Positions 14,371-44,207 of a DNA stretch of 64,000 nucleotides are shown here, one piece after another (positions within the stretch are counted from its first letter, which is position 1; the number at the start of each line of letters is the position of its first letter). A program made the translations under genes and the position numbers. The stretch spans positions 412,249 to 476,248 of the IMG/VR virus record IMGVR_UViG_3300018080_008436; one strand, given 5' to 3'. Below the pieces are notes generated by a model that saw only the letters and a list, made by a program, of their open reading frames with translations, was not told the origin of the DNA and searched no databases.

Positions 14371-17300
14371 TTAACGTTGGTCGTTGTCAATCAAGTTGTC
14401 ATTTAACAACTTGGAACCAATCGTAAACGCTCCAGCGATTTTGTCCTGGAAGCTAGGCTCCTGGGCAGGCTGTGATTGAATTACGATAGCTGGAAGACCA
14501 GTTCCAGCAGTTTTAACTTGCTGTTCAGTAGAAGCAGTTTTAACGGCCTTAACTGGGAACATAGTTTCCGCAACTGAAGCAATTTTATCAACTTCAAACT
14601 GAGCTAATGCAGTAACAACATTATCAAATGTGCTCTTATCAGAAGCAATTCTGTTGTTAGCGGCTAACCATGAAGCAGTACGAAGAGCTTCCTCTTTACG
14701 TGCTTCCTTGATTCTAGCAAGTTGTTCTTCTCTTTTCTGTTGTACCTGTTTGAGATACTTATCATTGATGCCAGGCATATCTGACTGAGTTTCCTTCTCA
14801 ACGCCCATATAAGCGTTATCGATAGGTACATCAGGCTTAGGTGCGTTAACGTCGATGTTATCTGGTCCTTCCTGTCCCATAGTAGCTTTTGCTCTAGGAA
14901 CGTCTGGATTTGCCATCTTTACATCGATGTTGTCAGCGCCTTCATGACCCAAAGAAGCATCGGCTCTAGGAACTCCAGCTTCAACATCACCCTCAACGGT
15001 GTCAACTTCTTTCATCTTTTTCGCTAATGCAAGCTGTCTCTGAGCCTCTTTGAGGTTTTTCTCAGCTTCAGCAATTACAGTACCTTTAATCTCATTATTG
15101 ATTGCAGGCATATCTGATTGAGTAGCTTTCTCAATTCCCATGTAGGAACTATCAACAGCTACGTCTGGCAGACCAGCAGGTGGATTAATGTTATCTGCGC
15201 CTTCATGGCCCATGGTAGCATTAGATCTAGGAACCTGAGGTTTGGCCATAGGAACGTCAATATTATCTGCTCCTTCATTCATCATAGTTGCCTTACTACG
15301 AGGTACTCCAGCTTCAACGTCTTTCTCAATAGTTTTGATGAGCTTAGGCTTACCTGCCAACTTAATGTTGGACTCAGCGCCAGAGCGTCTTACTCTTGAG
15401 GAATTCATTGCCAAAGCCTCTGCAAGTGCGTCGGTATCAAATGTTTCCATATCTTCTCCTTCTGGAACTTCTTCAGCTTCAAATGCAACGTCCTCTGCGA
15501 TGTCCTCTTCCAAGGCTTCATCACCAGTATTTTCAACAACTTCGAGGTTGTCTCCAGTGATGGTTACAGATTCAACTGCGACTTCTTCTGGTTCTTCAAT
15601 AATCTCATCAACCTCTACATCGACTGAGTCGAGTGGTTCGAGATCATCTCCGATTTCAACTTCTTCCAAGATAGCCTGAGCTTTCTTGGCTAAGTTTTCT
15701 TCTTTCTGAATGAACAATTCGTTCATTGTAGCGAGATCGTATTGGCTAAGTGCAATCTTTCCTTCTTTTGCTTCATCAGCAAAAGCTTGGACGTAAATGT
15801 TATCAGATTCTTCTTTAGCGAACTTCTTCTTAATGCAGTTGCAAATTGAAGTTGCTTGAACAACATCATGTCCTTTGCTCTTTTGATCTTCAATACATTC
15901 ATCCATTGGATCTACTTGCATTAAAGTGTCAGCCAATTTTTTCATTTGACGGACTTTGGTAAAACCAAGTCTCTTCAGTTCTTTGCATACGCATTCAGCC
16001 AATGGCTTATCTTTGCAAGGACCGAATCTAGCTACAGTGTTTCCACCATAAGTTCTAGCAATTCTTTCAACGCAGTTAGCAGTTGGGAACGTATCGGCGT
16101 TAGCCTGAGCAGTCTTCAACATTCCAACAACCTTAAGCTTAGAAGCGAACTTCCTTGCTTCTTCTTTGCATTCTGGGCAACTATTGTCAGGAGAAAGATC
16201 CCATTCAACTCTTAACAAGCCGTTTGAAGGATTCTTACTACTAACAATGAGGTTCTTCTCGAAAGAAGTTCCGCATTGTCCGCATTCGCATTTGGTGCGA
16301 CCATCGCCGCTTGCGATGACATCACATTTCTTATTTCCGCAAGCTGGGCAGACATCGCCATGGGCCTCTCTGTTAGCGGCAATACGAACAATAGAATCTT
16401 TATCAATTCTAGTTTGAGCGGCAACTGGAAGTGCTGGCATTTCTTCAGGCTCTTCAGGGCCTTCAACGTCTTCCATACCTTCTTCGCCAACGCTTTTGGT
16501 AGGTTTGATGATTCTAAATTCAATTTCTTTCTTAATGAGAGCTTCGTATTCGGCTCCGCAATTCTGGCAGTTACCGATAATTCCACCGTCATCTTCTTTA
16601 GTTACATCAACATCAGATGAACCACACTCTGGGCAAATGCTCCAAGGAGCTTGCTTTTCGCCAACAGTTGGGATCTCATCCTCTAACTCATCCTCATTAC
16701 CAGTGGTGAGAGCTTGAAGAGCAGGATCTTCTCCCATTGGAGGAGCGTCAAGACCTTCCTCAGGAGCGCCTGGAGCGGCGACTTCGCCTGCGGCCCCTGG
16801 CATTCCGCCACCCATTGGTGACTGAGCAGTTCTTTTCATCTTCTTATTATTATAGGCAACCTGATTAAGGTTTTCCATTTCAATATCAGCGTCAAGTCCG
16901 TCCTCAATGCCTTCTCCTACGAGATCGCCTTCAGGAACGATTTCTTCTTCAATTGGTGCTACTTCTTCGCCAATCGGAATTTCAACTGACTCTTCGCCAG
17001 CATCAGTCTGGACAGCGATTTGAATGGTATTACCATCAATAGTAACATTAGTGATAGAAGCAAGCTTCATATTTTCAGTTGCTAAAGCGCCTTTAGCAAA
17101 CTTAACGATATCTTTCTTGAAAGTGGCAGAAGTCTTTTGAGAACCAAGTTCTTCGAAATCGGTTTCAATTACGATGTCTGCTCCATCAAGTTTTTCAGGA
17201 TTAAGAATTTCTTCCTGAGCCTGGACTCGCTTTCTTGATTCCAAAGAAGCTAGAATTTCTTCTCTTTCAGCATCTCTTTTAGCCTTTTCGTTTTTAACGA

Positions 17301-17460
17301 CAGCTTTGGTTGATGCTTCTTTAGTTTCTTTCTTCTCTTCTTTTTCTTCGCATTCTTCATCCTCTTCGTCACACTCTTCTTCTCCAGCGACAGCTTGCTT
17401 CAGAGCATTTCTAAGTTCGTCCTTAACGTTAACTTTTGCTACTGTAGAGGCTTCAGCAGT
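14371..17460 (-). CDS. C-terminal scaffold/core part of the prohead protease-scaffold protein (Zn-ribbons, internal repeats); reached by a -1 shift
   Basis: Frame is open 72 codons upstream of the TTG at 17244, up to ~17463, with no ATG/GTG; many CxxC pairs; repeated VEAGVPR...EGADNID units. Confidence 0.7.
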   Translation of the reverse strand, partial: TAEASTVAKVNVKDELRNALKQAVAGEEECDEEDEECEEKEEKKETKEASTKAVVKNEKAKRDAEREEILASLESRKRVQAQEEILNPEKLDGADIVIETDFEELGSQKTSATFKKDIVKFAKGALATENMKLASITNVTIDGNTIQIAVQTDAGEESVEIPIGEEVAPIEEEIVPEGDLVGEGIEDGLDADIEMENLNQVAYNNKKMKRTAQSPMGGGMPGAAGEVAAPGAPEEGLDAPPMGEDPALQALTTGNEDELEDEIPTVGEKQAPWSICPECGSSDVDVTKEDDGGIIGNCQNCGAEYEALIKKEIEFRIIKPTKSVGEEGMEDVEGPEEPEEMPALPVAAQTRIDKDSIVRIAANREAHGDVCPACGNKKCDVIASGDGRTKCECGQCGTSFEKNLIVSSKNPSNGLLRVEWDLSPDNSCPECKEEARKFASKLKVVGMLKTAQANADTFPTANCVERIARTYGGNTVARFGPCKDKPLAECVCKELKRLGFTKVRQMKKLADTLMQVDPMDECIEDQKSKGHDVVQATSICNCIKKKFAKEESDNIYVQAFADEAKEGKIALSQYDLATMNELFIQKEENLAKKAQAILEEVEIGDDLEPLDSVDVEVDEIIEEPEEVAVESVTITGDNLEVVENTGDEALEEDIAEDVAFEAEEVPEGEDMETFDTDALAEALAMNSSRVRRSGAESNIKLAGKPKLIKTIEKDVEAGVPRSKATMMNEGADNIDVPMAKPQVPRSNATMGHEGADNINPPAGLPDVAVDSSYMGIEKATQSDMPAINNEIKGTVIAEAEKNLKEAQRQLALAKKMKEVDTVEGDVEAGVPRADASLGHEGADNIDVKMANPDVPRAKATMGQEGPDNIDVNAPKPDVPIDNAYMGVEKETQSDMPGINDKYLKQVQQKREEQLARIKEARKEEALRTASWLAANNRIASDKSTFDNVVTALAQFEVDKIASVAETMFPVKAVKTASTEQQVKTAGTGLPAIVIQSQPAQEPSFQDKIAGAFTIGSKLLNDNLIDNDQR

Positions 17461-19940
17461 TTTTCATCAACTTTCTTACTGATACTCTGTTCACCAAGTT
17501 CGCCATCTGAGAGAACATCAACAGCATCAATAATAGTATCTGGATTAATAGTGTCATCAGATGCAATTACTCTCAACTTGTTAACAAGACAGTGTTCGAC
17601 TTCAGTTGGGGAAGCAGTTGCAACTTTTACGTTTTTGGCGTTCCAATAGGATGATCGCTTCGAAAAAGAAGCAGATTCAGAAGATTGAGGTTCTTCTAAC
17701 AAAGATCCTGCTAATCTTACACGTTCCTTAGTGGTTGCAACGCAGTTGTTCGCAATTTCTTGCAATTCTTGTGGGGTTGCTCCAGTTTCAAGGGAAACCT
17801 CTGCAAACGCTTCAACGACAGCATCCATGTGTTCCTTAGCGGACTTAAATAGAGATGCATCTCTGTTGGCCTGACGTGCCCATGCAGGATCGACATTGTC
17901 TAACTGCTTCTGGGTGATTACTTCAGGCTCATTGTTGGTACGATAGCCTTCACTATCCAATTGTTTTTGGGTGACAGTATGTTTGTCCTCATCCTTACGG
18001 GGAGATACACCATTACTATCATTATCCAATTGTTTTTGGGTAATGACTTCAGGTTCGTCATCCTGTCTGGGGTTCAGCTTCAACTCGCTGTCATCCAACT
18101 GTTTCTCAGTGATAACTTCTTTTTCACCTTTTCTTGGACTCGCGTTATCATTGCTGTCCAGTTGTTTTTGTGTGATGACCTGCTGTTCTTCCCCAGTGCG
18201 ACCGTGATACAACTCGGATCTGTGATCTTCGAGTTGTTTCTGAGTGATCACTTCTGGAGTTGCAAGAACGGTATTGGCACCAGCCTCTTTAGTTTCTTTA
18301 CTCATTCTTTCTACTCCTTCTCTTGGATTTGTTTTGGCGAATAAATCTAAAAATTGATGAGCCGCTACTTTTGGCGACTCACTGATTAAATTCTTATCTT
18401 GATCTGACAGATCGTCATAGGTCCAAATTTGCATTCTGTCAGAGTTAGTGTCCTCCGCGACGATGATAAATGAATCGTCTCTATTTTTCACTGCGAGTTT
18501 TAAATTACCAATTTGCATTGATGGTACTTCTTTTATATACTCAAAAAAGCTTTGTTTTTCCTGCCACGAGTCAGATAAAACTTGCATAGCTTTTTCACGT
18601 TGTTTTTCTTTACTAGCTACGGTTCGTCTTTTTCCCATAGATTTAACTCCCGTTTTATTCATTTTATCGCACAGACTCGCGGCCTTTTGCAAAACAGAAG
18701 CTCCGAACTCATAATGATCTACGGCCTCATCTGCGACTCTCCTAATTAAATGTGAACTCTGGGCGGCTGGACGCATAGGTGCGGTAATAGGCATCTGCGG
18801 TGTATTTACTGGAGGTTGCCCTGGCGCTCCAGTTGTCGTTCCAACTTCCATCGCTTGTTCTGAAGCAACTGGCATTGGTGCGGCATCTCTTGGAGCCGTT
18901 TCCAATCCCCCTCCTGGTGTTGGTGGTACTTCCCCTGTTGGAGGCATACCTTCTTCTGGAGCGTTACCCTCGGTTCCAGGAACCTGAGATTCAACACTTC
19001 CATATCCAGCCCCTACTAATTCATCTGACCAAGTTTGTAGACTAGCAATAATATCTACTAAATCACTTGCAAATTCAACTTCAACTTGTTGTCGGTTCTT
19101 AATCAAGTTAACAGCAATGTTCTCTAATGTTTCAAGAACCTGATTAATCTGATCAATTTCTTCCTGACTTGCATTTTTCTCAAGTGCCGCAGTCTTAATC
19201 ATTCTAAGGTAATTCTCAACATTGGCAACTCTTGCAAGATAATCATCGTTTGGAATTATACCTTCAATATGGCAACTTGGGCAAGCAGGATCAACAACTC
19301 CACTTAACTCAATAAACTTGATCCCATAATTATGTTCAAATACTGGTTCGTCTTTGAATTCCTTCACTTCGCCAGTTCTAACGTTTCTGGCCCTACCAGT
19401 AAATTTTCTGCTCTTTCTATTTCTAATATGTTCGCAGTAATCTTCAGTTCTCTCAGCTTTGTTTTCGCAAATACTGCAAGTACTGTATTCAACTGAAGCA
19501 CCCATGGAGACTCCAGTCATATATCCTTGTTCAATACCGCGACAAATATGAGGATAAGCATCTCTATCTACAAAAGCTATTGTATAAACAGCATTATCAT
19601 CTTCGTTCCATTCGGCCCAGATGATCTTACCTTTAGCCTTTTCTATATCTTGATTTTCATGATTGGTAAAGAAAGGGACACCTTCGAAACTCTTATAAGC
19701 TTTAAGCAATTCTTCTTTCGAAAATGAATCACCATTACTATTAGGTTCGTCAGCTTTGATTGCTTTAGCCCTGAAAAATAAAGCATTTGGATGCTTTGTA
19801 ATTTCTGCTTGAACAATCTTTTCTTTCTCTGAACCAGGCTCTATCAAAACTCTGCCAGAGGCAGTTTTAATCATAACCTCGTCTTCCTTAGAAATTTGCT
19901 CTACAGGACAAGGTTCGGTTAAAGCAACTTTTATTAACAT
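17439..19940 (-). CDS. prohead (maturation) protease with scaffold extension
   Basis: NSNGDSF...FFTNH...AKGKI...GVSMGASVEYSTCSIC...CEHI...FIELSGVVDPA, typical of HK97-type prohead serine proteases; located between portal and MCP. Confidence 0.8.
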   Translation of the reverse strand: MLIKVALTEPCPVEQISKEDEVMIKTASGRVLIEPGSEKEKIVQAEITKHPNALFFRAKAIKADEPNSNGDSFSKEELLKAYKSFEGVPFFTNHENQDIEKAKGKIIWAEWNEDDNAVYTIAFVDRDAYPHICRGIEQGYMTGVSMGASVEYSTCSICENKAERTEDYCEHIRNRKSRKFTGRARNVRTGEVKEFKDEPVFEHNYGIKFIELSGVVDPACPSCHIEGIIPNDDYLARVANVENYLRMIKTAALEKNASQEEIDQINQVLETLENIAVNLIKNRQQVEVEFASDLVDIIASLQTWSDELVGAGYGSVESQVPGTEGNAPEEGMPPTGEVPPTPGGGLETAPRDAAPMPVASEQAMEVGTTTGAPGQPPVNTPQMPITAPMRPAAQSSHLIRRVADEAVDHYEFGASVLQKAASLCDKMNKTGVKSMGKRRTVASKEKQREKAMQVLSDSWQEKQSFFEYIKEVPSMQIGNLKLAVKNRDDSFIIVAEDTNSDRMQIWTYDDLSDQDKNLISESPKVAAHQFLDLFAKTNPREGVERMSKETKEAGANTVLATPEVITQKQLEDHRSELYHGRTGEEQQVITQKQLDSNDNASPRKGEKEVITEKQLDDSELKLNPRQDDEPEVITQKQLDNDSNGVSPRKDEDKHTVTQKQLDSEGYRTNNEPEVITQKQLDNVDPAWARQANRDASLFKSAKEHMDAVVEAFAEVSLETGATPQELQEIANNCVATTKERVRLAGSLLEEPQSSESASFSKRSSYWNAKNVKVATASPTEVEHCLVNKLRVIASDDTINPDTIIDAVDVLSDGELGEQSISKKVDEKLLKPLQ
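17895..18260 (-). repeat. six degenerate (E/Q)VITQKQL protein repeats in the scaffold
   Basis: EVITQKQLEDHR, QVITQKQLDSN, EVITEKQLDDS, EVITQKQLDND, TVTQKQLDSE, EVITQKQLDNV. Confidence 0.85.
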
Positions 19941-19941
19941 A

Positions 19942-23945: not shown

Positions 23946-26168
23946 TTACTCTTTTGGTGCTTGATTTTGAATAGCCATTTCCTTTTTCATAATTGTCTGC
24001 ACAATTTTACTCATTGCCTGCTGTGGCTGTTTCTCTATCTCACTATCTTTAAACCTTAAAACAGTCCAGCCCATCTGGGCAAGTTGCCTATCTCTTTCTT
24101 GGTCTTTTTGAATCTGTTTTGGAGAATTGTGAAAAATCTCTCCATCTGCTTCAATAATAAGTCTCAAATGAGGGAGGGCAAAGTCTACAGGATGTTCCAT
24201 ATTTCCTATCATAATCTTATACTGAGGGATAATAGGATATTTAATAATCCCGTCTTTTTGATGTTGAACCATATGATCCATCAATTCTCTTTCAATTTTT
24301 GTAAAAGCGATTCTCCCCTTCTCATCTCTTACCTGTCCATCTTTCCCTTGCGAATAGGAAGATGGTTTTGCGGTCTCTGAACGCATTTTCTTTTGCTCAG
24401 AAACTAATTTATCTCTGGTTTTCTTTTTCAAAACCTTTCCGCCAAATTGTGATGGATCAGCAACTTCCGCAGTCAATGGCCCTGTTTTTGCCAATACGGG
24501 TTCTCCACCTGTTGGTGCGGCTGGCGCTCCACCGAGATCTCCTCCTGGCTCAATAGGGGGTTCTCCCCCCATACCTCCCATTCCACCTCCAAGATCCATG
24601 CCTCCTGGCATTCCGCCGAAGCCACCACCCATGTCTCCTCCAGGCTGTTGCCCCATACCTTGTCCAAGGGCCATCATTTGAACGGCATCATAGCGTTTTC
24701 TTTCAATTTCTTGATCTGGGTCAATATCAAATGCTTCAAGAACAGTCTGCGCACTAACAAGACCCTTCTCGTACAATTGAATAATAAATGTTCTGTATTG
24801 CTGTTGATCTCTAAGATGCATGGAGTTCCATTTAATCTTAGGAACCAGATACTCTTCTTCTCCCGTCTCAGGATTTGTATCAATAAACCCTTGTCGTTTA
24901 GCTTCTGGGAGATATAGGAAATCTGTTATCCAATCAGCTATTTGACTTCTAAATGTGTCCAACCTGTGAATCATAGCTTCAATACCAACAGAAGCGCTTG
25001 CAAATGTTGGACCTTCACCATTAAGAAGAGCATTGTTAATCATCATACCATCAAGGACTTCCTGATTGATGAATTCAAACTCATTACTAAGAGTAAGAAC
25101 TTTGCCAGAAGCACCCACCCAGTCAAAATCAAATGCATGGTGTGTGACAATGGTAAGGTTAGGGTCATTAGCAGTTTCGGCAAGCTGTGCTTGTACAGCG
25201 GCAATATCGGCAGGTCCAGCAGGACGTTCATCACTACCGACTTTAACAATCTTAATAGGAACGATTAGACGTTCTGCAACGATCCACTGAGCTACCATGA
25301 GCTTAGTTTTATATGAAAGTATAGGGAATAATCTACGGACCATTCCGATTCCATAACGAGTATATCCACTTTCACCATATTTCAAGTGAGAAACGTTACG
25401 ATTATCTAATCGGATAGGCTGACCTGACGAAACAAGTGCGATTACATCTGGAGAAAGTTTCTCATATCCAGGTGTTTTTCTCTGGACCATATTGATGAGT
25501 TCTTCATCTGGTTTCAAAGCGATAATCGGGTCAGGATTTAAAGGTGGGGTATAGACATCTACAAAGTCAGGGTTAAGGATGACCATTCTTCTGACCGTTC
25601 CTCCCTCATGATCGCAAATAATATCTCCGACCATTCCAGAGCCTCCACAATGCTCACAATGGATTTCTGCAAATGGGAAGCAATCGCCAAGCAAATGGAC
25701 TTCATGACTTATCAAACGACACCATTTAGTCAGTTCGAGTCTTTTTTTGAATTTATCAAAGTATAACTTAATCTCTCTATCTTTACACTCATGTTCCCAA
25801 TCACTCATTGGAAAATAACTGTAGAAATCAATTGCAGAAGCTACCTTGGGTTCGTTTTCATAGAAGAATCTTGCCCATTGATATTGTTCTATTCTTTTAC
25901 TTGGGATCTGCCAGTTGATTGGAGTATGAACTGGGGAGAAAAATTGAGGCTGACCATAAATAGTTCCTGCACTTGCTACGGAACTAAATTTCGCCATACC
26001 ATTTCCCCATTGGGTACTGGCACCAGTCGTTGGGGCATAGTTTTGTCTTGGGATAGGTCGATATGATTGGTGCTGTGGAACCTCGCTGGTAGCGAGTTTA
26101 GCGGGATCTCTATTTCTTAATGCTCTAAAAGTCTCTTCTAGATTGGTAGTTTGTAGGTGAACTTGCAT
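23946..26168 (-). CDS. portal protein with C-terminal DUF559/Vsr-like endonuclease domain
   Basis: WARFFYENEPKVASAIDFYS, HLLGDCFPF, YGIGMVRR, IVPIKIVKVG portal-like core; Gly/Met/Pro linker; then PVDFALP..RLIIEADGEIFH...KDQERDRQL..GWTVLRF. Confidence 0.8.
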   Translation of the reverse strand: MQVHLQTTNLEETFRALRNRDPAKLATSEVPQHQSYRPIPRQNYAPTTGASTQWGNGMAKFSSVASAGTIYGQPQFFSPVHTPINWQIPSKRIEQYQWARFFYENEPKVASAIDFYSYFPMSDWEHECKDREIKLYFDKFKKRLELTKWCRLISHEVHLLGDCFPFAEIHCEHCGGSGMVGDIICDHEGGTVRRMVILNPDFVDVYTPPLNPDPIIALKPDEELINMVQRKTPGYEKLSPDVIALVSSGQPIRLDNRNVSHLKYGESGYTRYGIGMVRRLFPILSYKTKLMVAQWIVAERLIVPIKIVKVGSDERPAGPADIAAVQAQLAETANDPNLTIVTHHAFDFDWVGASGKVLTLSNEFEFINQEVLDGMMINNALLNGEGPTFASASVGIEAMIHRLDTFRSQIADWITDFLYLPEAKRQGFIDTNPETGEEEYLVPKIKWNSMHLRDQQQYRTFIIQLYEKGLVSAQTVLEAFDIDPDQEIERKRYDAVQMMALGQGMGQQPGGDMGGGFGGMPGGMDLGGGMGGMGGEPPIEPGGDLGGAPAAPTGGEPVLAKTGPLTAEVADPSQFGGKVLKKKTRDKLVSEQKKMRSETAKPSSYSQGKDGQVRDEKGRIAFTKIERELMDHMVQHQKDGIIKYPIIPQYKIMIGNMEHPVDFALPHLRLIIEADGEIFHNSPKQIQKDQERDRQLAQMGWTVLRFKDSEIEKQPQQAMSKIVQTIMKKEMAIQNQAPKE

Positions 26169-26209
26169 GCACACATTCCTGATTTAGATTTTTTTTATTA
26201 TACAAAATC

Positions 26210-32060: not shown

Positions 32061-32975
32061 TCACCTAATAATGTTTTTTAACCTGTCCCACAAATTTTGT
32101 GGTTCTTCTATTGTTTGTTCTTGTTCTGGAGAGGTTTCTCCTTCATCAACTTTTATTTCTAGACTGATTATGTTATCAATCAAGAAGTTCTTTGGCGTTC
32201 CCCCTTCAATACTCCATCCACTTCCATTAATAGTAGGAGAAGCATCATAAGCCGTAAAATATCTTCCGTTAGGTCCAGACTTAATTGGATACCCTTCACC
32301 TGGAACTGGCATCAATCTTCTTGGTGGTAAAACCCTTCCGCTCAAAGTCCAGTAGACGATATCCATCTCCTGGTTATTTTGTTCTGCATACTTGATCTTA
32401 GCTGTCTGGTTCATGTTGTACTCAACAACTTGATTGGGCTGTGGAGGCTGTTCATACATTTGTTGTTGTTCAGGAGTAACTGGTATTTCTTCCATTGGGG
32501 CTTCTTGAAGAACTTGCTCTTCTTCGGGAGTTAACTCACCCTCTAAATCATTCGGCTCCATCAAAGGATCTTCATTCTCAACATTAACTTGAGCAAATCT
32601 TGAAAGATTCTTGTAAGTAACATTGCTTTTAAGAGTTCTCACCCAATCATCTCCATCAAACATCTGGAAACCAACATCAATATTGTTTTTGGAAAACCAC
32701 CCTTTATTAACTTCAACAGCATATTGGCATGGGCTTGAGGAAGTCGTCATTCTTGTACTCATTGGGGCCATGGATTCTATTTGCATAATCTTTCCACTAT
32801 CATCAAGAAAAGCAATATCCAATGGAATATAGGTGTTCTGCATCCAAAAACTTTGGGGATGCTTTCTAGGAAAGATGAATATCATTCCATCATTTTCCCC
32901 CAGTGTTTTACGATCCATTAAACCATAAGATCGTTTATGGGGAGTATCCGCTATTTCCAAACTCAAATAAGCCAT
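32061..32975 (-). CDS. DUF192 domain fused to a WYL-like domain
   Basis: EIADTP.KRSYGLM.R..L..NDGMIFIF...FWMQNTYIPLDIAF...YAVEVNKG (DUF192); C-terminal MDIVY...RRLMP...YFTAYD...KNFLIDNIISLE (WYL-like). Confidence 0.75.
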   Translation of the reverse strand: MAYLSLEIADTPHKRSYGLMDRKTLGENDGMIFIFPRKHPQSFWMQNTYIPLDIAFLDDSGKIMQIESMAPMSTRMTTSSSPCQYAVEVNKGWFSKNNIDVGFQMFDGDDWVRTLKSNVTYKNLSRFAQVNVENEDPLMEPNDLEGELTPEEEQVLQEAPMEEIPVTPEQQQMYEQPPQPNQVVEYNMNQTAKIKYAEQNNQEMDIVYWTLSGRVLPPRRLMPVPGEGYPIKSGPNGRYFTAYDASPTINGSGWSIEGGTPKNFLIDNIISLEIKVDEGETSPEQEQTIEEPQNLWDRLKNIIR

Positions 32976-37020: not shown

Positions 37021-38082
37021 TTATCTTGCTACTTGAATACCATTCTTTTCGCAAAATTCGATGGCGTATATTGAGAATACTCCAGCACTCAATCCGTAGT
37101 TGTCGTTGTCTCCAACAATTGCAGTTATTACTCCGATAACCTTACCATCATGACGATTGATAATTGGACCGCCACTGTTTCCTGGTAATATTGCGAGATC
37201 TAAAAACATGTATAGAGGTGCTCCATTATGAGAATAGATCTCCCTGTCAAGAGAGCTAACATAACCGAAAGTTGTGTTGTTTTCGAATCCATGAGGACTT
37301 CCAACTGCAAAAATTTCATCTCCGACATTAACGATTTGATCGAATTCAAAAGGTTTTGCATTGATATCGGCCTTCAGTAAAGCTAGGTCTTTAGCTCCAT
37401 CAAAGGCTATAACCTCTGCGTTAACCATCTGATCTCCATCTTTGATCAGTACCCTTATCATATCCTCATATTCAGAGAAGTCAAGCGAGCTTTCAGTATT
37501 TTTGTTGTAATTTTTTACGACATGGGCGCAAGTAAGGAAATAATTAGGGGCTACGCAGAAAGCAGAACCCGTTTCCTCAGTATTCGTGCTGAAGTTCTGT
37601 GACTTTACAACAAACGTCTTTTCAAGAGCCTCATCAACTTGATTTGGTTCTGGTTCAGCTTGCGCTACTCTAGAGATCCATTTGACAAGAACTCCCCTCT
37701 CTTCCATCTTTCTTCGATATTGTTGAGCCGATTCCAAAGATGGGAAAGTTTTATAGCCACCTCTAACCTTTAACTTCCAAACCTCTTTATCACCAGAATT
37801 ATTAGTAAGGTTTCTGAAGATGTCTAAATCTCTTTCTCTTCTTTTGTAATCGTCACCCTCATCTTTGTAAGATCCAGGTTGAGATTCTTCGTTCCTTGAC
37901 CAATCTCCCCAATCACCTTGTTGACCTGGGAGTTTATATTGTTTGCCAGTCAATACATCCCATATGGTATGCACATTATTGAAGGGCATAACGGATTTTG
38001 GAGTAGTGGGACTTAAGCCAGAGCCTGGATATAGAATCTCAGGCATTGTTGTGCGATAAGCTTTTTTCTTTTGTTTGCCCAT
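37021..38082 (-). CDS. trypsin-like (S1/HtrA-type) serine protease with N-terminal extension
   Basis: GSAF...FLTCAHVV, DLALLK, GNSGGP triad; AGG-N19-GAATAA at 38116-38140. Confidence 0.85.
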   Translation of the reverse strand: MGKQKKKAYRTTMPEILYPGSGLSPTTPKSVMPFNNVHTIWDVLTGKQYKLPGQQGDWGDWSRNEESQPGSYKDEGDDYKRRERDLDIFRNLTNNSGDKEVWKLKVRGGYKTFPSLESAQQYRRKMEERGVLVKWISRVAQAEPEPNQVDEALEKTFVVKSQNFSTNTEETGSAFCVAPNYFLTCAHVVKNYNKNTESSLDFSEYEDMIRVLIKDGDQMVNAEVIAFDGAKDLALLKADINAKPFEFDQIVNVGDEIFAVGSPHGFENNTTFGYVSSLDREIYSHNGAPLYMFLDLAILPGNSGGPIINRHDGKVIGVITAIVGDNDNYGLSAGVFSIYAIEFCEKNGIQVAR

Positions 38083-38140
38083 TTTTGATACCTAAATTAA
38101 GTGTACTCTAACTTATTCAAAAAAAGTACACTTTGAACCT

Positions 38141-38971: not shown

Positions 38972-39208
38972 AATAAAACTCCCAATTTAGTCTTGGTGTT
39001 GTTTATTATACAAATTAACCGAGCAGATCTAACCCTATGTTTTTGTCTTGCATAAAGGTGTTGATGTGTTTAAGGAAAAGAGCTTTCTCTTGTGGAGTAA
39101 AAAATGCAGATGCAAGTAAACTACTCAACTCATCACTTGTCGCAGGGATATCATCCTCGTCAAACGATCTTTTGAATGAAACAAATGCTCGACTTACTTT
39201 CTGGTCAT

Positions 39209-40150
39209 CTACTTTTTTTTTGTAGCTTCAACGATTTGACGGTTTTTGAAATAATTGGATGCAAAGAGTCTATCTTCCTCATCCATTAGATCTTCTTCGT
39301 CTAAGTCAGTTACTTCAAAATCCTCACCCACTTCGTCAAGACCGATTTGGTAAGTTACAATGCCCTGACTAAGTTTTGAATCATCAAATGAAGCTAATGA
39401 AAATGGAATTTCGCCATGATGTTTGGACATGAAGTATTCCAAATCGTCAGCGATATCTTCCAAAGTCAAACTACTTGTATCGTTTGTACCAGTTATTTCA
39501 AGTTTACCAACAGCGGTAGGGGTTCCACCTATGTCAATCTCTTCGTAGTAGACTTCTTTAACAGCTTCTAGAACATCATCGTCGTCTCCGAGGTCTTCTA
39601 TTGGAAAATCAGGATCGATTTCATTAATTTCAAAGTCCTGTCCATAAGGATCATCTAGGATATCATCCATATTGTCTTCAAGACTACGATCACGTTCCAC
39701 ATAATCCCAATCAATATCCATTGACTGAGCTTTCTTCTCGAAAGCTATTTTAAGGCCATCTTCGCTTTTGATTTCCCACCATCTTTGTCGCTTGGGAGTT
39801 TCTGAGGCTGTCTCATACTCCTCTCCTTCGATATTGTAATCGGCCAATCGTTTCTCTTCAAGCTTATTCATATCACCTTCATAAGCTTGAGCATTTCTGT
39901 GTTTAGAACCAAATTCATCTTTGGCTTCATCTAGGTTTTTCTCAATAACAACTTCTGCACTACCAGTTCTGTTGTTTTCAAGAAGCTTTTCCATAACTGA
40001 ATCTTTGTCACCTACGTGATGAGGATCTAACTGCTTATCTGTAATTTCCTCTGGAATGTCGCCATGGGATTCTGACAACATGCGATCAGTATGGGCATCT
40101 TCATCTAATTTTTCATAGACTACAAATTTATATTCAGACATTTTATGCAC
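39209..40150 (-). CDS. acidic hypothetical head-associated protein; candidate -1 frameshift extension to 39015
   Basis: 313 aa ending ACA AAA AAA AAG TAG; AGG-N19-GAACAA at 40176-40200; LKIAFEKKAQ motif. Confidence 0.7.
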   Translation of the reverse strand: MHKMSEYKFVVYEKLDEDAHTDRMLSESHGDIPEEITDKQLDPHHVGDKDSVMEKLLENNRTGSAEVVIEKNLDEAKDEFGSKHRNAQAYEGDMNKLEEKRLADYNIEGEEYETASETPKRQRWWEIKSEDGLKIAFEKKAQSMDIDWDYVERDRSLEDNMDDILDDPYGQDFEINEIDPDFPIEDLGDDDDVLEAVKEVYYEEIDIGGTPTAVGKLEITGTNDTSSLTLEDIADDLEYFMSKHHGEIPFSLASFDDSKLSQGIVTYQIGLDEVGEDFEVTDLDEEDLMDEEDRLFASNYFKNRQIVEATKKK

Positions 40151-40200
40151 TCTCCTGAAGAATATTTCTTATTTGTTCTTCTTCTATTATAAAAAATCCT

Positions 40201-42036: not shown

Positions 42037-42853
42037 AATATTCCTCCAATATATAAACACAACCATTGTCTGATGGACAAAAGGTCAGAATTTTATTTCC
42101 AACCTTATATATTTCAAACAAATGAGTCGCATCTCCTTCAGAGGAAAGCATATGCACAGTATTGTCACTTAAAAAGAAAAGTTTGTTCTTGACATAATAT
42201 ATGTCTTTTAGGTCTTTGCAGTCATCGATAATTGTGTACGTTGAGTTTTTTCGTATCCCCCTTAAGCAATTGTTACCACTGTCTGCAAAACAGACAGTTT
42301 TTCCCATTATTGCAACTCCAGTTGGTTTAGAAATCCTCGTATTTTTTAAATTTGATATTGAGAATCCAGCCTTACCACAACCTATAAGTGGAAAGGCGTT
42401 CTCCTCATTCATTATAAAGCATCTGTGACAATTTGTAGTGCTCCAGATGACTTGATTTTCTAATGAAGTTACATAAGTCCTTGAGTCGCTTCTTCCAAGG
42501 ACTTTTCTTCTAAATTGTTTAGCACTGTTTTTTGAGATCAAATTCTCAAAATCCATCAACTCCAAATCGACTTTGTGAATTCGGCTACCACCTTCTGAAA
42601 CTATATATAAACAATCATAACTGGAATTATAGCATATCGAACTGAAAGTTGAAAAGTCTGGCTTCTCAGTATATGTGAGTTCATAACGCCAATCAGGATT
42701 GCAGTCGCCATTATTCATCTTTCCTATGCCATCATCATGTAGGAAAAACAGATTATCCCCAACACAACAAAAATCCTTGATCTCGAAGTTGATCTCGAAA
42801 TTTCGTTGTTTTCGGGTGGTAAGGTTCTTTTCTGTAAGTTTATAGATCATCAA
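42002..42853 (-). CDS. NHL-repeat/beta-propeller-like protein
   Basis: KPTGVAI...FADSGNNCLR NHL-like repeat. Confidence 0.55.
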   Translation of the reverse strand: MMIYKLTEKNLTTRKQRNFEINFEIKDFCCVGDNLFFLHDDGIGKMNNGDCNPDWRYELTYTEKPDFSTFSSICYNSSYDCLYIVSEGGSRIHKVDLELMDFENLISKNSAKQFRRKVLGRSDSRTYVTSLENQVIWSTTNCHRCFIMNEENAFPLIGCGKAGFSISNLKNTRISKPTGVAIMGKTVCFADSGNNCLRGIRKNSTYTIIDDCKDLKDIYYVKNKLFFLSDNTVHMLSSEGDATHLFEIYKVGNKILTFCPSDNGCVYILEEYYVESPEEAESY

Positions 42854-44207
42854 TGATTTCGAACTGATCTTCTACCATTCTACAAATGTGATTACCAAAG
42901 TTAATATCAACTTCCAAATGATCACCAAATGGTATAACTTGGACAACATGTCCTGTTTGTTGATAATAGCTTTCCAAAGTTGGATCAGTGCAAACAACAA
43001 TTGCGCCTTTTCCATTTTGGTAGTAATCCTGTTCAGAGTATTTTGATCCTGCTTCTTTCGTCATTGAAGATGGATTAACAAACCAAGCAGGTTTGTCTCC
43101 TTTAAAAGAAACAGTAAAAGTTGATGCCGCCTTAGATTCTTTATCTATTGTTTCGAAAGTAGGGCTTTCATAGGGAAAGTCTTTAGGTATGTCTGGTAAA
43201 CTACGTCCCTCTAAATGTAATACAGATGAATTGTCTCCTACACAGCAATGCCCTATCTTCTCCACAATTGGCTTCCAATATGCTTGATAGAACTCCAGGG
43301 AGTGATATGGATACATATCCCTGATTTTGCCCCCAGGTCTTATGTCTTGCAAAAACAAATCTTTCCCAATATCTAATGCGATTACAATATCGTCACCATC
43401 AAATAAATCAATACCATGGGAATGTTTTACCCATACTGCACTTGGATGATTATTTTCAACTGCTGAACAAGCACGTTTGCCATACTCATTCATCAACTCT
43501 TGGATTGCATCAGCGTCGATGTCTCCCCAAGCATCTTGATAAGAAGTAAGAGATTGGGCTTGCTTTATTAAAGACTTAGATGAGGCCATCGGCATTTCCA
43601 TTGGATCGGCCATTGGCATCCCTCCCATCGGATCGGCCATCGGATCAGCCATTGGATCAGCCATTGGGACATCTTCCTCTTCTTCACTTTCTTTTTTGTC
43701 CTTGGCTAAATCCTCAGAATAATATTTGTGGACAAGTTCCTTTATTTTAGAAATAATTCCGTTCAGTCTTTCTTCGCTTTTTTCTTTATCTTCTTCTTCA
43801 GCGAGTTCATCTTCGTCCATGTTGTCTATCACAAACAAAATTTCACTAACAACAGCTTTTGCTTCGAAGTAATTTACTTTCTTCTGATTCTTATCCTCTT
43901 CATCCATGCCATCCGCCGTATCCACGAGACCATCATAAATTTCTTCATAATGATCTGCTAATCTCGTCTCTGCCGAAACATCTTCTACTAATGGCTTTTG
44001 CAAATCCTCTATAGCGAATTTTTCTAAAGCGTCAATGTGATAAGAATGTTTCTCCGCAATTTGTTTGGCATCGCTATATGCTTCCCAGGCGTAACGATAC
44101 AAAGGTTCTGAGAATTTTGTAAGGTTACTGTGATGGATGGATGAGAATTTGTTTATTGTAAAACAATATCTGTCTTTTATCTTGAAAACTTTAATGTGTT
44201 TGTTCAT
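42840..44207 (-). CDS. hypothetical head-associated protein with PMAD repeats
   Basis: 455 aa; LEKFA, LIKQAQ, MTKEAG; AGG-N19-GAA at 44242-44266. Confidence 0.7.
   Translation of the reverse strand: MNKHIKVFKIKDRYCFTINKFSSIHHSNLTKFSEPLYRYAWEAYSDAKQIAEKHSYHIDALEKFAIEDLQKPLVEDVSAETRLADHYEEIYDGLVDTADGMDEEDKNQKKVNYFEAKAVVSEILFVIDNMDEDELAEEEDKEKSEERLNGIISKIKELVHKYYSEDLAKDKKESEEEEDVPMADPMADPMADPMGGMPMADPMEMPMASSKSLIKQAQSLTSYQDAWGDIDADAIQELMNEYGKRACSAVENNHPSAVWVKHSHGIDLFDGDDIVIALDIGKDLFLQDIRPGGKIRDMYPYHSLEFYQAYWKPIVEKIGHCCVGDNSSVLHLEGRSLPDIPKDFPYESPTFETIDKESKAASTFTVSFKGDKPAWFVNPSSMTKEAGSKYSEQDYYQNGKGAIVVCTDPTLESYYQQTGHVVQVIPFGDHLEVDINFGNHICRMVEDQFEIIDDL

What the first reader, a model, noticed from the sequence alone, without database searches (positions are those of the whole stretch)
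14371..44207. Dense [KR]-x-A|[SQ] motif in scaffold and head proteins: probable prohead protease cleavage code
Seen in the protease/scaffold: MIKTAS, MIKTAA, EKNAS, RRVAD, VKVATAS, TKEAS, VKFAK, MKLAS, MKRTAQ, RKFAS, LKTAQ, IKLAG, LKEAQ, LRTAS, VKTAS, VKTAG. Seen in neighbours: MEKKAQ/LVKTAS/VKTAN (26210), VERTAS/MVKTAS (27546), MVKTAS (31117), EKKAQ (39209), LIKQAQ/MTKEAG (42840). It matches the end of the N-terminal leaders. Known: T4 gp21 and phiKZ gp175 cut many head proteins at a short motif ending in Glu. Inference: this protease cuts after Ala in a hydrophobic-K-x-A context, which marks the acidic hypothetical ORFs as prohead core or ejection proteins.
Basis: partly seen in the sequence, partly recalled or inferred. 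Interest (0 to 1): 0.8.

Follow-up and report, generated by a model that had tools for sequence, protein, structure and literature searches.

The report
Megaphage head-protein cleavage motif K-x-A|S
A short K-x-A-(S/Q/G) motif is packed into a giant protease-scaffold protein and several neighbouring head-module proteins of an uncultured ~0.5 Mb phage. It is kept at the same positions in dozens of distant relatives and avoided in the capsid shell protein, so it is very probably the cutting code of the phage's head-maturation protease.

Summary
[KR]-x-A-[SQ] occurs 21 times against 2.7 expected in five ORFs, and the strict [IVLM]KTA[SANGQ] form 9 times against 0.06.

The two "protease/scaffold" ORFs (17439-19940 and 14371-17244) are one 1,856-codon gene. 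A 1-nt assembly indel at 17457/8 splits it; a sister contig and an independent assembly both have it intact.

In 53 orthologous polyproteins at about 30% identity the motif is 3.3- to 6-fold enriched, and 17 sites are positionally conserved, against 0-1 for eight control patterns. These sites bracket the protease domain at A27 (47/49) and A257 (48/49). The major capsid protein is about 10-fold depleted.

Conserved sites also occur in ORFs 26210, 27546, 31117, 32061, 39209 and 42840.

The protease domain has the T4 gp21 / herpesvirus assemblin fold (Z 10 and 7.3-7.8). Cultured relatives (phage G, Tunturi_5, mycobacteriophage Alice) show the same enrichment.

Best reading: these are prohead-protease processing sites, probably cut Ala|Ser as in herpesviruses. 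A cut after Lys/Arg is not excluded, and nothing has been shown biochemically. I rate it a new variant of a known kind, of moderate interest.

The parts
14371..19940 (-). One protease-scaffold polyprotein gene (1,856 codons once the missing base is counted). The window shows it as two ORFs, 17439-19940 and 14371-17244. It carries 28 [KR]-x-A-[SQGNA] sites.
   Evidence: The sister contig L003 has one intact 1,856-aa ORF and is 99.98% identical with a single gap. All 49 relatives have one ORF of 1,622-2,396 aa. Site list.
17457..17458 (.). Position of a missing base that splits the polyprotein ORF in the window. It is an A on the + strand, a T in the gene's sense.
   Evidence: Alignment with L003. 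An independent Logan contig of run X1, word depth 64, has 'A put in behind 17457'.
19860..19940 (-). N-terminal leader of the polyprotein (residues 1-27), ending in V-M-I-K-T-A|S. The motif codons lie at 19857-19868.
   Evidence: Ala27 is invariant in 39-40 aligned sequences including phage G gp19. The motif is present in 47 of 49. Residues 1-27 have pLDDT below 50 in the model.
19224..19859 (-). Prohead protease domain (residues 28-239) with a Cys-rich insert. His94 (19659-19661) and Ser145 (19506-19508) are invariant. The domain contains no motif in this phage.
   Evidence: phrog_18299 head maturation protease, E 1.9e-19. AF2 model pLDDT 81. T4 gp21 (5jbl) Z 10.0 over 128 residues; HSV-2 and HCMV proteases Z 7.3-7.8. 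Invariant columns.
19167..19232 (-). Cluster of sites just after the protease domain: R-V-A|N (239), K-T-A|A (251) and E-K-N-A|S (257). This is the candidate 'release' site.
   Evidence: The site at 257 is conserved in 48 of 49 and the one at 239 in 27 of 49. Residues 255-258 form the loop between helices 232-254 and 259-279 of the model.
14431..14682 (-). C-terminal cluster of six sites in the last 100 residues (RTA|S, RIA|S, KIA|S, KTA|S, KTA|G, KIA|G). The last sits about 20 residues before a conserved F-T-I-G-x-K tail. This is the candidate 'maturation' site that would free the scaffold from the shell.
   Evidence: site positions; sites in the last 120 aa average 2.86 against 1.45 expected if uniform; the K-[IL]-A|[SG]-x-F-T-I-G tail is kept in the closer relatives.
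16822..16833 (-). K-M-K-R-T-A|Q site (polyprotein residue 1039), one of the best conserved internal sites. Others: 16105-16116 (LKTA|Q, residue 1278) and 18279-18290 (KEA|G, residue 553).
   Evidence: Conserved in 48/49, 43/49 and 42/49 respectively.
26210..27541 (-). 443-aa protein next to the portal, with an acidic C-terminus. Sites: M-E-K-K-A|Q (Ala89; 27272-27283), L-V-K-T-A|S (Ala251; 26786-26797) and V-K-T-A|N (Ala327).
   Evidence: Site 89 is conserved in 56/59 orthologs and site 251 in 36/59, at a median 25% identity. Control patterns give 0 conserved clusters.
27546..28574 (-). 342-aa protein. Sites: V-E-R-T-A|S (Ala110) and M-V-K-T-A|S (Ala119; 28215-28226).
   Evidence: 7 motifs against 1.05 expected. 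Site 119 is conserved in 9/12 orthologs.
31117..31791 (-). 224-aa very acidic protein with a 22-residue leader ending V-M-V-K-T-A|S (31723-31734).
   Evidence: The site is conserved in 9/10 orthologs. PSSM score 12.0 bits.
32061..32975 (-). DUF192-domain protein (domain residues 5-104) with L-S-R-F-A|Q at Ala128 (32589-32600), between the domain and a C-terminal extension.
   Evidence: Pfam DUF192, E 2.8e-31. The site is conserved in 27/41 orthologs.
39209..40150 (-). 313-aa acidic protein. The F-E-K-K-A|Q site at Ala141 (39725-39736) sits at the end of the conserved N-terminal ~140 residues.
   Evidence: 95 of 123 homologs have a [KR]-x-A-[SQGNA] motif at this boundary. Most of the rest have K-x-A followed by E, K or T.
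42840..44207 (-). 455-aa protein with an acidic, Met/Pro-rich middle. Sites: S-L-I-K-Q-A|Q (Ala217; 43554-43565) and M-T-K-E-A|G (Ala386; 43047-43058).
   Evidence: PSSM score 14.1 bits. Of 36 aligned sequences, 11 carry the strict motif at the 217 column and about 15 a hydrophobic-[KR]-x-A form; 21 carry it at the 386 column.
12036..12899 (-). Major capsid protein, 287 aa, with no delta domain and no motif.
   Evidence: phrog_2522, E 1.8e-72. 55% identical to phage G gp27. In 32 orthologs there are 4 motifs against 36 expected.
12970..13491 (-). 173-aa probable decoration/cement protein, poor in the motif.
   Evidence: Weak Pfam Phage_cement hit. In 41 orthologs there are 7 motifs against 15 expected. 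It occupies the same position as phage G gp26.
23946..26174 (-). Portal protein with a C-terminal DUF559 endonuclease-like domain. Relatives have an N-terminal L-T-K-A-A|Q site; the window has M-A-K-F-S-S there, so no match.
   Evidence: phrog_16240, E 1.6e-47; Pfam DUF559. Site present in 27 of the 35 aligned portals.
37021..38082 (-). Trypsin-like (Trypsin_2/DegP-type) serine protease encoded in the head module. It is the rival candidate enzyme.
   Evidence: Pfam Trypsin_2, E 4e-23. No homolog in phage G, Tunturi_5 or Bixzunavirus at E<=1e-3.
11217..11318 (-). Shared ~33-residue N-terminal module, MKIVKTAGGKTRIKMTRKEWTDMGKKAGWMKKA|N, of ORF 10920-11318. The same module opens ORF 6505-6912 (6814-6912, ending GWLKTA|N) and ORF 3718-5475 (5377-5475, with no terminal motif). 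It is a candidate targeting leader.
   Evidence: hmmsearch E 5e-20 to 3e-18 on three otherwise unrelated window ORFs. A further 12 distinct ORFs in six related loci begin with it (one more begins 18 residues in); about eight of them end it in G-W-x-K-x-A|Q.

Best explanation
The motif marks the processing sites of the phage's own head-maturation (prohead) protease.

Proposed mechanism, in order:
1. The protease is the N-terminal domain of a 1,856-residue protease-scaffold polyprotein. The polyprotein co-assembles with a capsid protein that has no delta domain.
2. Inside the prohead, the enzyme cuts itself free at K-T-A|S (after Ala27) and at the E-K-N-A|S cluster (after Ala257).
3. It detaches the scaffold from the shell at sites next to the conserved C-terminal tail, and chops the scaffold at about 28 sites into pieces of about 4-150 residues that can leave the head.
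4. It also trims leaders or propeptides of 22-250 residues from accessory head-module proteins (ORFs 26210, 27546, 31117, 32061, 39209, 42840). The remaining parts would stay in the head as internal or ejected proteins.

Consensus: P5 L/M, P4 V/I/L, P3 K (85%) or R, P2 variable (T, V, E), P1 Ala, P1' S > Q > G > A > N.

What is shown: enrichment, positional conservation, depletion in shell proteins, the fold of the enzyme, and the single-gene organisation.

What is inferred: that the sites are cut at all, which enzyme cuts them, and that the cut falls between Ala and the next residue. I put the Ala|X register at about two in three, given that the sites are cut.
For: 1. Enrichment cannot be explained by composition.
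- In 53 polyprotein orthologs there are 1,135 motifs against 343 in shuffles. For [KR]xA[SQ] the figures are 692 against 115. Permuted-order patterns give 288-319.
- When anchored only on Ala-Ser, 49% of sites have K/R at -2.

2. Positional conservation at about 30% identity.
- There are 17 site clusters present in >=40% of 49 polyproteins, six of them in >=80%. Eight control patterns give 0-1.
- Conserved sites also occur in 26210 (56/59), 27546 (9/12), 31117 (9/10), 32061 (27/41), 39209 (95/123) and 42840.

3. Sites bracket the protease domain in all relatives. Ala27 is invariant, including in phage G gp19, which is what autoprocessing predicts.

4. Proteins that must survive inside the prohead avoid the motif: capsid protein 4 against 36, decoration protein 7 against 15.

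5. The enzyme has the gp21/assemblin fold, and His94 and Ser145 are invariant.

6. In the Ala|X register the logo has specificity at P3 and P1, V/I at P4 and Ser at P1'.
- This is the layout measured for SPN3US gp245: A-x-E|, Val at P4, Ser at P1' (PMC10052503).
- It also fits herpesvirus sites: YLQA|T and VQA|S, with the protease fused to the scaffold and R and M sites (PMC4498786).

7. The same enrichment is seen in cultured relatives that have no trypsin-like protease homolog.
- Phage G: gp7 10 against 2.9, gp11 5 against 0.8, gp19 5 against 1.05.
- Tunturi_5: gp328 14 against 4.4, gp332 9 against 2.7.
- Mycobacteriophage Alice: gp90 18 against 7.
Against: - There is no biochemical or mass-spectrometric evidence for any cut in this clade. 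I found none in the held literature.
- HK97-type proteases, the nearest sequence family (weak Pfam S78_2 hits), have been seen to cut after K or R (phi12: R128|L129 and K87|Q88; PMC8569155). The conserved K/R could therefore be P1.
- Some motif copies sit in conserved, probably buried cores and are unlikely to be cut: portal E-P-K-V-A|S, and protease E-L-K-K-A|A in relatives.
- The orthologs are related, so counts over them are not independent events.
- The sets of orthologs for 27546 and 31117 are small (10-12).
Confidence: 0.62

Rival explanations
1. The same sites and the same prohead protease, but the bond cut is the one after the conserved Lys/Arg (K|x-A-S). The basic residue would be P1, as reported for HK97-type capsid proteases.
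For: - The position is K 85% / R 15%, the classic pair for a basic P1.
- The phi12 HK97-like protease cuts after R128 and K87, with 'a positively charged residue in the P1 position' (PMC8569155).
- Relatives of this protease give weak hits to Pfam Peptidase_S78_2 and S78.
Against: - The two most informative positions after K/R would then be P2' (invariant Ala, 3.5 bits) and P3' (Ser/Gln/Gly, 2.0 bits). I know of no relative with that pattern.
- The Ala|X register reproduces the P4-Val, P3, P1, P1'-Ser layout measured for SPN3US gp245 and the Ala|Ser/Thr bond of herpesvirus assemblins.
Confidence: 0.17
2. The sites are cut by another enzyme and not by the prohead protease. The candidates are the trypsin-like serine protease encoded at 37021-38082 in the same module, or a host protease.
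For: - A Trypsin_2 domain protein (E 4e-23) lies between the terminase and portal genes.
- Chymotrypsin-fold enzymes exist that cut after basic residues or after small residues (general knowledge).
- Host proteases process capsid proteins in some phages (80alpha, mentioned in PMC8569155).
Against: - The motif brackets the assemblin-like domain in every relative, which fits autoprocessing.
- Phage G, Tunturi_5 and Bixzunavirus show the enrichment but have no homolog of the trypsin-like protein at E<=1e-3.
- Hosts of these phages span Bacillota, Acidobacteriota and Actinomycetota, so a shared host enzyme is unlikely.
Confidence: 0.08
3. The motif is not a cleavage site. It would be a conserved structural or binding element of scaffold-type proteins, for example a helix boundary or a contact point for capsid or portal proteins.
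For: - Several copies lie at predicted helix ends: residues 255-258 lie between two helices.
- Some copies sit in conserved cores that are unlikely to be cut.
- No cut has been observed.
Against: - The motif is shared by at least eight unrelated proteins. It often sits at the junction between a conserved part and a variable part, or at the end of a short disordered leader.
- It is strongly avoided in the shell proteins.
- It flanks a protease domain on both sides.
- A binding motif would not be expected about 23 times per scaffold with a variable middle residue.
Confidence: 0.1
4. Chance or amino-acid composition: K-, A- and S-rich acidic proteins simply contain many K-x-A-S strings.
For: Single hits in individual ORFs such as 33679, and the weaker hits in 39209 and 42840, are only p 0.02-0.05 taken alone.
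Against: - 0 of 500 shuffles reach the observed counts.
- Permuted-order controls sit at expectation.
- There are 17 conserved clusters against 0-1 for controls.
Confidence: 0.01

Closest known systems
Herpesvirus assemblin and the UL26 protease-scaffold protein (MEROPS S21)
   Same: - The protease domain is fused to the N-terminus of the scaffold.
- A site just after the protease domain is a 'release'-site analogue. A site near the C-terminal capsid-binding tail is a 'maturation'-site analogue.
- Proposed Ala at P1 and Ser at P1'; PrV sites are YLQA|T and VQA|S (PMC4498786).
- Shared fold: Z 7.3-7.8 to the HSV-2 and HCMV proteases.
   Different: - P3 is Lys/Arg here, against Val/Leu in herpesviruses.
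- There are about 23-28 sites per polyprotein, against two.
- The polyprotein is 3-4 times longer.
- The herpes catalytic triad is Ser-His-His; here only one invariant His (H94) and Ser145 were identified.
- No nested scaffold-only gene was looked for.
- There is no detectable sequence similarity.
T4 gp21, phiKZ gp175 and SPN3US gp245 prohead proteases with short cleavage motifs (MEROPS S77 type)
   Same: - One prohead protease trims many head proteins at a short P3-x-P1 motif.
- N-terminal propeptides are removed from internal or ejected proteins, and the scaffold is degraded.
- P4 Val and P1' Ser preferences match SPN3US (PMC10052503).
- This is the best structural match: T4 gp21 5jbl, Z 10.0, 23% identity over 128 residues.
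   Different: - P1 is Glu in all of these (L/I-x-E, S/A/G-x-E, A-x-E). Here P1 would be Ala and P3 basic.
- Their capsid proteins are themselves cut. Here the capsid protein lacks the motif.
- Their protease is a separate small protein, not fused to a giant scaffold.
HK97 gp4-type capsid maturation proteases (Pfam Peptidase_S78 / S78_2 XkdF) and protease-scaffold fusions such as P2 gpO
   Same: - Nearest sequence families: phrog_18299 at E 1.9e-19, and weak S78_2 hits in 21 of 39 relatives.
- The gene lies between the portal and capsid genes.
- P2 gpO (from my own knowledge) also joins a protease and a scaffold in one chain.
   Different: - The window protein does not reach the Pfam thresholds.
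- In HK97 the substrate is the capsid protein's own delta domain. Here the capsid protein has none.
- Documented cuts in phi12 follow K/R without an Ala two residues on.
- The size differs greatly: 1,856 aa against about 225-285 aa.
Unannotated large proteins of phrog_2774, e.g. mycobacteriophage Alice gp90 (1,511 aa) and Gordonia phage Pupper gp94
   Same: - Same N-terminal protease domain: 35-39% identity; phrog_2774 at E 2.1e-32.
- Same gene order: portal, a large protein (>1,200 aa), the polyprotein, a small protein (~170-180 aa), then the capsid protein.
- The motif is enriched in gp90, 18 against 7, with N-N-K-T-A|G right after the domain.
   Different: - They are annotated as hypothetical protein or capsid maturation protease. 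No cleavage code is described in the records or in the papers I could read.
- P1' is mostly G, A or N in Alice.
- Outside the protease domain there is no detectable similarity.
T4 capsid targeting sequence (CTS) of internal proteins
   Same: A short conserved N-terminal peptide is shared by otherwise unrelated proteins and ends in the protease motif. The 33-residue module is on ORFs 10920 and 6505 and on about 12 ORFs in relatives.
   Different: - It is 33 residues against about 10.
- It has no sequence similarity to the T4 CTS.
- ORF 3718 has the module but lacks the terminal motif.
- Location of these proteins in the head is unknown. A small folded domain is an equally open reading.

Membership tests
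Prohead protease of the assemblin / T4 gp21 / HK97 gp4 superfamily | Assemblin-like fold of the catalytic domain | tested here: met
   AF2 model with pLDDT 81 and pTM 0.71. The top six Foldseek hits are T4 gp21, the HSV-2 protease and the HCMV protease. VIA-align gives Z 10.0 (gp21, 128 aligned residues, 23% identity) and 7.3-7.8 (assemblins).
Prohead protease of the assemblin / T4 gp21 / HK97 gp4 superfamily | Conserved catalytic Ser and His | tested here: inconclusive
   His94 (T-N-H) and Ser145 (S-M-G) are invariant in 39 sequences. I could not check by superposition that they coincide with the catalytic residues of gp21, and the third triad member was not identified.
Prohead protease of the assemblin / T4 gp21 / HK97 gp4 superfamily | Gene lies in the head module between the portal and major capsid genes | tested here: met
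   Order on the minus strand: portal 23946-26174, ORF 19942-23859, polyprotein 14371-19940, ORF 12970-13491, capsid protein 12036-12899. The order is the same in phage G and Alice.
Prohead protease of the assemblin / T4 gp21 / HK97 gp4 superfamily | Proteolytic activity on head proteins | not testable with these tools
   This needs expression and mass spectrometry.
Pfam Peptidase_S78 / Peptidase_S78_2 (HK97 gp4, XkdF) | Score above the curated Pfam threshold | tested here: not met
   The window protein has no Pfam protease hit at E<=0.01 or at E<=1. Among relatives the best S78_2 E-value is 3.8e-4 (21 of 39 at E<=1), and S78 is hit by 4 of 39. The PHROG family phrog_18299 'head maturation protease' is matched at E 1.9e-19.
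Herpesvirus-type protease-scaffold polyprotein (UL26-like organisation) | Protease and scaffold in one polypeptide | tested here: met
   One ORF in 49 relatives, in the sister contig and in an independent assembly. That the C-terminal 1,600 residues act as a scaffold is inferred from their position, from the absence of a delta domain in the capsid protein, and from the motif load.
Herpesvirus-type protease-scaffold polyprotein (UL26-like organisation) | Release site directly after the protease domain and maturation site near the C-terminus | tested here: inconclusive
   The motif after the domain is conserved in 48/49. A K-[IL]-A|[SG] site about 20 residues from the C-terminus, before a conserved F-T-I-G tail, is kept in the closer relatives, and C-terminal sites are enriched 2.86 against 1.45. 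Cleavage itself has not been observed.
Herpesvirus-type protease-scaffold polyprotein (UL26-like organisation) | Scissile bond Ala|Ser | not testable with these tools
   The logo fits this (P1 Ala, P1' Ser 42%), but the register is inferred.
T4 / phiKZ-type cleavage code | Glu at P1 (L/I-x-E or S/A/G-x-E) | tested here: not met
   The conserved sites have Ala or K/R, never Glu, at the informative positions. The control pattern [DE].A[SQGNA] gives 0 conserved clusters. The system works like these ones but with a different specificity.
Capsid targeting sequence (T4 CTS-like leader) | Short N-terminal peptide shared by unrelated proteins and ending in the protease motif | tested here: met
   Found in three window ORFs and 12 further distinct ORFs in relatives. 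Two of the three window copies, and about eight of the 12 in relatives, end in K-x-A|[NQ].
Capsid targeting sequence (T4 CTS-like leader) | Carrier proteins are packaged in the head and the leader is removed | not testable with these tools
   There is no virion proteome for this clade.

The most novel reading that the evidence does not exclude
The K-x-A|S code and the shared 33-residue N-terminal module together form a cargo-loading system.
- The module would dock otherwise unrelated proteins onto the giant protease-scaffold polyprotein inside the prohead.
- The protease would then release them.
- The set of proteins that half-megabase phages carry in the head and inject could then be read from sequence alone.
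- The Ala|Ser, protease-fused-to-scaffold design would be an ancestral feature shared with herpesviruses rather than a herpesvirus speciality.
Probability: 0.25. Interest if true: 0.75.

Novelty: new variant of a known kind. Interest (0 to 1): 0.55.

Why it matters
Prohead proteases with a defined short motif have been mapped for T4, phiKZ-like phages and herpesviruses. I found nothing comparable for phage G-like megaphages, Tunturi_5 or the large Bixzunavirus group, whose >1,500-residue proteins are mostly annotated 'hypothetical'.

If the code holds, it does four things:
- It assigns a function to a conserved giant gene (phrog_2774).
- It lets head-internal or ejected proteins of uncultured half-megabase phages be predicted from sequence.
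- It explains how a scaffold for a very large capsid is removed.
- It adds a phage system whose proposed Ala|Ser bond and protease-scaffold fusion resemble herpesvirus assembly more closely than T4 does.

It can be tested at once on phage G, for which virion LC-MS/MS data already exist.

Tried and rejected
- **Pfam on the window protease.** No hit. Membership rests on PHROG and on fold.
- **Profile search of the protease alignment against PDB sequences.** Only spurious coiled-coil hits.
- **The search for related loci with the single protease protein.** It found only the window's own phage. The portal alignment was needed.
- **Literature on phage G, on Myrna (a relative of Alice) and on Tunturi_5.** No cleavage data. 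The phage G capsid paper (PMC7316594) is not held.
- **Atlas search for the 33-residue module protein.** Nothing informative.
- **Homology of ORFs 26210, 27546, 31117, 39209 and 42840 to phage G proteins.** None found. Only the capsid protein, protease and portal match.
- **Portal as a substrate in this phage.** Rejected. The site present in relatives is M-A-K-F-S-S here, and the other portal motifs lie in conserved core segments.
- **ORF 19942-23859 (1,305 aa).** It has 1 motif against 3.9 expected and is not a predicted substrate.
- **AAA ATPase, TerL, RNR and the tail-fibre-like ORFs.** They are at or below expectation.
- **Composition or chance as the explanation.** Rejected.
- **A real frameshift or two-gene organisation.** Rejected.

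Full report
**Context.** The window is part of a ~476-525 kb contig of an uncultured phage from sediment or seawater metagenomes (IMGVR_UViG_3300018080_008436). Its closest cultured relative is Bacillus phage G, with 55% capsid protein identity. The minus strand carries a head module:
- large terminase, 40201-42066;
- portal with a C-terminal DUF559 domain, 23946-26174;
- a 1,305-aa unknown protein, 19942-23859;
- an ORF whose first ~220 residues match 'head maturation protease' (phrog_18299, E 1.9e-19; phrog_2774, E 2.1e-32), 17439-19940;
- a 957-aa ORF, 14371-17244;
- a 173-aa probable decoration protein, 12970-13491;
- a 287-aa major capsid protein with no delta domain, 12036-12899.

**The observation.**
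- In the five ORFs that carry most copies, [KR].A[SQ] occurs 21 times against 2.7 in shuffles, and [IVLM]KTA[SANGQ] 9 times against 0.06. Three patterns with the same letters in another order sit at expectation.
- Those ORFs were chosen because they carry the motif, so I added unbiased checks.
- VKTA and KTAS are the top 4-mers that are not low-complexity and are shared between proteins.
- A position matrix trained only on other phages' sites gives 16 strong hits in the 55 window ORFs against 1.15 expected. All 16 lie in the minus-strand structural block.

**One gene, not two.**
- A sister contig (L003) is identical over 5.7 kb except for one extra base, and it has a single 1,856-codon ORF.
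- An independent Logan assembly of the probable source run, at word depth 64, also has that base ('A put in behind 17457').
- All 49 non-identical relatives encode one protein of 1,622-2,396 residues.
- The window's split into 833-aa and 957-aa ORFs is therefore an assembly indel. The real product is a protease-scaffold polyprotein.

**Comparative test.** Using a portal alignment I fetched 80 loci with 10-kb flanks and found orthologs by BLASTP.
- In 53 polyproteins, [KR]xA[SQGNA] occurs 1,135 times against 343 in shuffles (11.8 per 1,000 residues). [KR]xA[SQ] occurs 692 times against 115. Permuted patterns give 288-319.
- In the capsid protein the motif occurs 4 times against 36 expected. The figures are 7 against 15 in the decoration protein and 10 against 16 in the AAA ATPase.
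- In a 49-sequence alignment at about 30% identity, 17 site clusters are present in >=40% of sequences and six in >=80%. Eight control patterns give 0-1 and none.
- The best conserved sites are Ala27 (47/49), Ala257 (48/49), Ala553 (42/49), Ala1039 (48/49) and Ala1278 (43/49) in polyprotein numbering.
- Ala27 is invariant in a 40-sequence alignment that includes phage G gp19.
- The first two sites bracket the protease domain, and in this phage the 212 residues between them contain no site.
- Six sites crowd the last 100 residues. The final one lies about 20 residues before a conserved F-T-I-G-x-K tail. Across orthologs, the last 120 residues hold 2.86 sites against 1.45 expected.

**Other proteins.** Conserved sites occur in the following ORFs.

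| ORF | Site | Conservation |
|---|---|---|
| 26210 | Ala89 | 56/59 |
| 26210 | Ala251 | 36/59 |
| 27546 | Ala119 | 9/12 |
| 31117 | Ala22 | 9/10 |
| 39209 | Ala141 | 95/123 homologs have the motif exactly where the conserved N-terminal ~140 residues end |
| 42840 | Ala217 | 11/36 strict motif (~15/36 with looser P1') |
| 42840 | Ala386 | 21/36 |

Relatives' portals have an N-terminal L-T-K-A-A|Q site (present in 27 of the 35 aligned portals), but the window's portal does not.

**The logo.** From 666 distinct conserved-site instances in other phages: P5 L/M, P4 V/I/L, P3 K 85% / R 15%, P2 T/V/E and others, P1 Ala, P1' S 42%, Q 27%, G 15%, A 11%, N 5%. Little information lies beyond P1'. P3, P1 and P1' are fixed by the search pattern. 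Anchoring on Ala-Ser alone still gives K/R at -2 in 49% of cases.

**The enzyme.**
- An AlphaFold2 model of residues 1-280 has mean pLDDT 81, with the leader 1-27 below 50. Its best PDB matches are T4 gp21 (Z 10.0, 128 residues, 23% identity) and the HSV-2 and HCMV proteases (Z 7.3-7.8).
- His94 and Ser145 are invariant.
- Pfam thresholds are not reached; relatives give weak S78_2/XkdF hits.

**Which bond is cut.** This is inferred, not shown.
- In the Ala|X register the layout (P4 V/I, P3, variable P2, P1, P1' Ser) matches what was measured for SPN3US gp245: A-x-E|, Val at P4, Ser at P1' (PMC10052503).
- It also matches the Ala|Ser/Thr bonds of herpesvirus R and M sites, in a protein that likewise joins protease and scaffold (PMC4498786).
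- Against this, the HK97-like protease of phage phi12 cuts after R128 and K87 (PMC8569155), so a cut after the conserved K/R is possible.
- I weight the two registers about 2:1 in favour of Ala|X.

**Which enzyme cuts.**
- A trypsin-like protease is encoded at 37021-38082.
- Phage G, Tunturi_5 and Bixzunavirus have no homolog of it, yet they show the same enrichment around the same protease.
  - Phage G: gp7 10 against 2.9, gp11 5 against 0.8, gp19 5 against 1.05, capsid protein 0.
  - Tunturi_5: gp328 'DNA ejection protein' 14 against 4.4, gp332 9 against 2.7, and the protease flanked by K-T-A|N, K-T-A|A and K-V-A|S.
  - Alice: gp90, a 1,511-aa protease polyprotein, 18 against 7 with K-T-A|G right after the domain.
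- This favours the prohead protease.

**Mechanism proposed.**
1. The polyprotein co-assembles with the capsid protein, probably through its conserved C-terminal tail.
2. Once concentrated in the prohead, the protease frees itself (Ala27, Ala239-257), cuts the tail from the scaffold, and reduces the scaffold to fragments of about 4-150 residues.
3. It also removes leaders or propeptides from accessory proteins.
4. The shell proteins escape because they lack the motif.

The statistics, the conservation, the fold and the gene structure are shown. Everything about actual cutting is inferred.

**Side finding.**
- Three otherwise unrelated window ORFs (10920, 6505, 3718) start with the same ~33-residue module. 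Twelve further distinct ORFs in six related loci carry it at or near their start.
- Two of the three window copies, and about eight of the twelve in relatives, end in G-W-x-K-x-A|[NQ].
- This recalls the T4 capsid targeting sequence, but nothing shows that these proteins are in the head.

**Novelty and score.**
- The kind of system is well known: a prohead protease with a short motif, N-terminal propeptides and scaffold degradation.
- New here are the specificity, the giant fused scaffold with about 23 sites (median over 49 orthologs, range 17-33), and the avoidance of the motif in shell proteins.
- Also new are the breadth of the code (hundreds of metagenomic megaphages plus three cultured groups) and the closeness to the herpesvirus design.
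- I found no description of it in the literature available to me, but the key phage G paper could not be read.
- Interest 0.55. It is a solid, testable prediction rather than a surprise of principle.

Noticed in passing
window 17457-17458: A single missing base splits the protease-scaffold gene into two ORFs. A sister contig and an independent assembly of the probable source run both have the base, so this is an assembly error, not biology.
   Followed up: yes
window 3718-5475, 6505-6912, 10920-11318 (N-termini); L006, L008, L009, L011, L013, L039: A ~33-residue N-terminal module (MK[IL][IV]KTA[SG]GK.T.K.S..EW...GKKAGW.K.A|[QN]) opens otherwise unrelated proteins of 99-585 aa. It is sometimes found on three tandem genes. 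It may be a targeting leader or a small domain. No Pfam, PHROG or Atlas match was found.
   Followed up: partly
window 23946-26174; proteins P0122-P0240: The portal protein carries a C-terminal DUF559 / REase_MTES_1575 endonuclease-like domain throughout the clade. Many relatives' portals are 1,000-1,290 aa and contain intein/Hint domains.
   Followed up: no
L038, L039, L044, L050, L054, L064, L072, L074 (polyprotein N-terminal regions): In several relatives the protease domain is interrupted by an insert of about 250-550 residues (offset between query and subject coordinates). This may be an intein.
   Followed up: no
window 37021-38082: A trypsin-like (Trypsin_2, DegP-type) serine protease with an unknown 160-residue N-terminal part is encoded inside the head module. 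It is absent from phage G, Tunturi_5 and Bixzunavirus.
   Followed up: partly
window 32061-32975: A DUF192 domain protein with a 175-residue C-terminal extension lies in the head module. A conserved R/K-x-A|Q site separates the two parts in 27 of 41 orthologs.
   Followed up: partly
window ~17892-18224 and ~14900-15400: There are internal repeats in the polyprotein. Six copies of V-[IT]-T-[QE]-K-Q-L-[DE] are spaced about 20 residues apart. Further downstream there are repeated G-A-D-N-I-D-V / V-P-R-x-x-A-T-M units. The scaffold part also contains several CxxC...CxxC zinc-ribbon-like pairs.
   Followed up: no
window 19942-23859: A 1,305-aa protein with no family match lies between the portal and the polyprotein. 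A protein of similar size (Alice gp89, 1,271 aa, LysM) lies just upstream of the polyprotein gene in mycobacteriophage Alice. It is poor in the motif (1 against 3.9 expected).
   Followed up: partly
window 28957-30981: An AAA-family ATPase (674 aa) sits in the middle of the head module, between motif-bearing ORFs. It does not carry the motif above expectation.
   Followed up: no
window 58752-63943: Two large ORFs are very rich in Ser: 32% Ser in 61895-63943, with a ~105-residue S/E/T/Q/D/G-only stretch. 58752-61835 matches a virion structural protein family. They are probably tail fibre-like.
   Followed up: no
window 44276-47779: The ribonucleotide reductase large subunit is 1,167 aa, with a middle segment (about residues 343-564) that matches endonuclease/helicase-type phage families. 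This suggests an inserted homing element.
   Followed up: no
window 42840-44207, residues ~190-210: A Met/Ala/Asp/Pro repeat (MADP x4, then MPMADPMEMPMA) lies just upstream of the S-L-I-K-Q-A|Q site.
   Followed up: no
window, several ORF starts (3718, 14011, 33679 and others): Five ORFs begin with MKIIK and others with MKI[VM]K or MKL[VI][KR]. Part of this is the shared module. The rest may simply reflect A/T-rich codon preference at gene starts.
   Followed up: no
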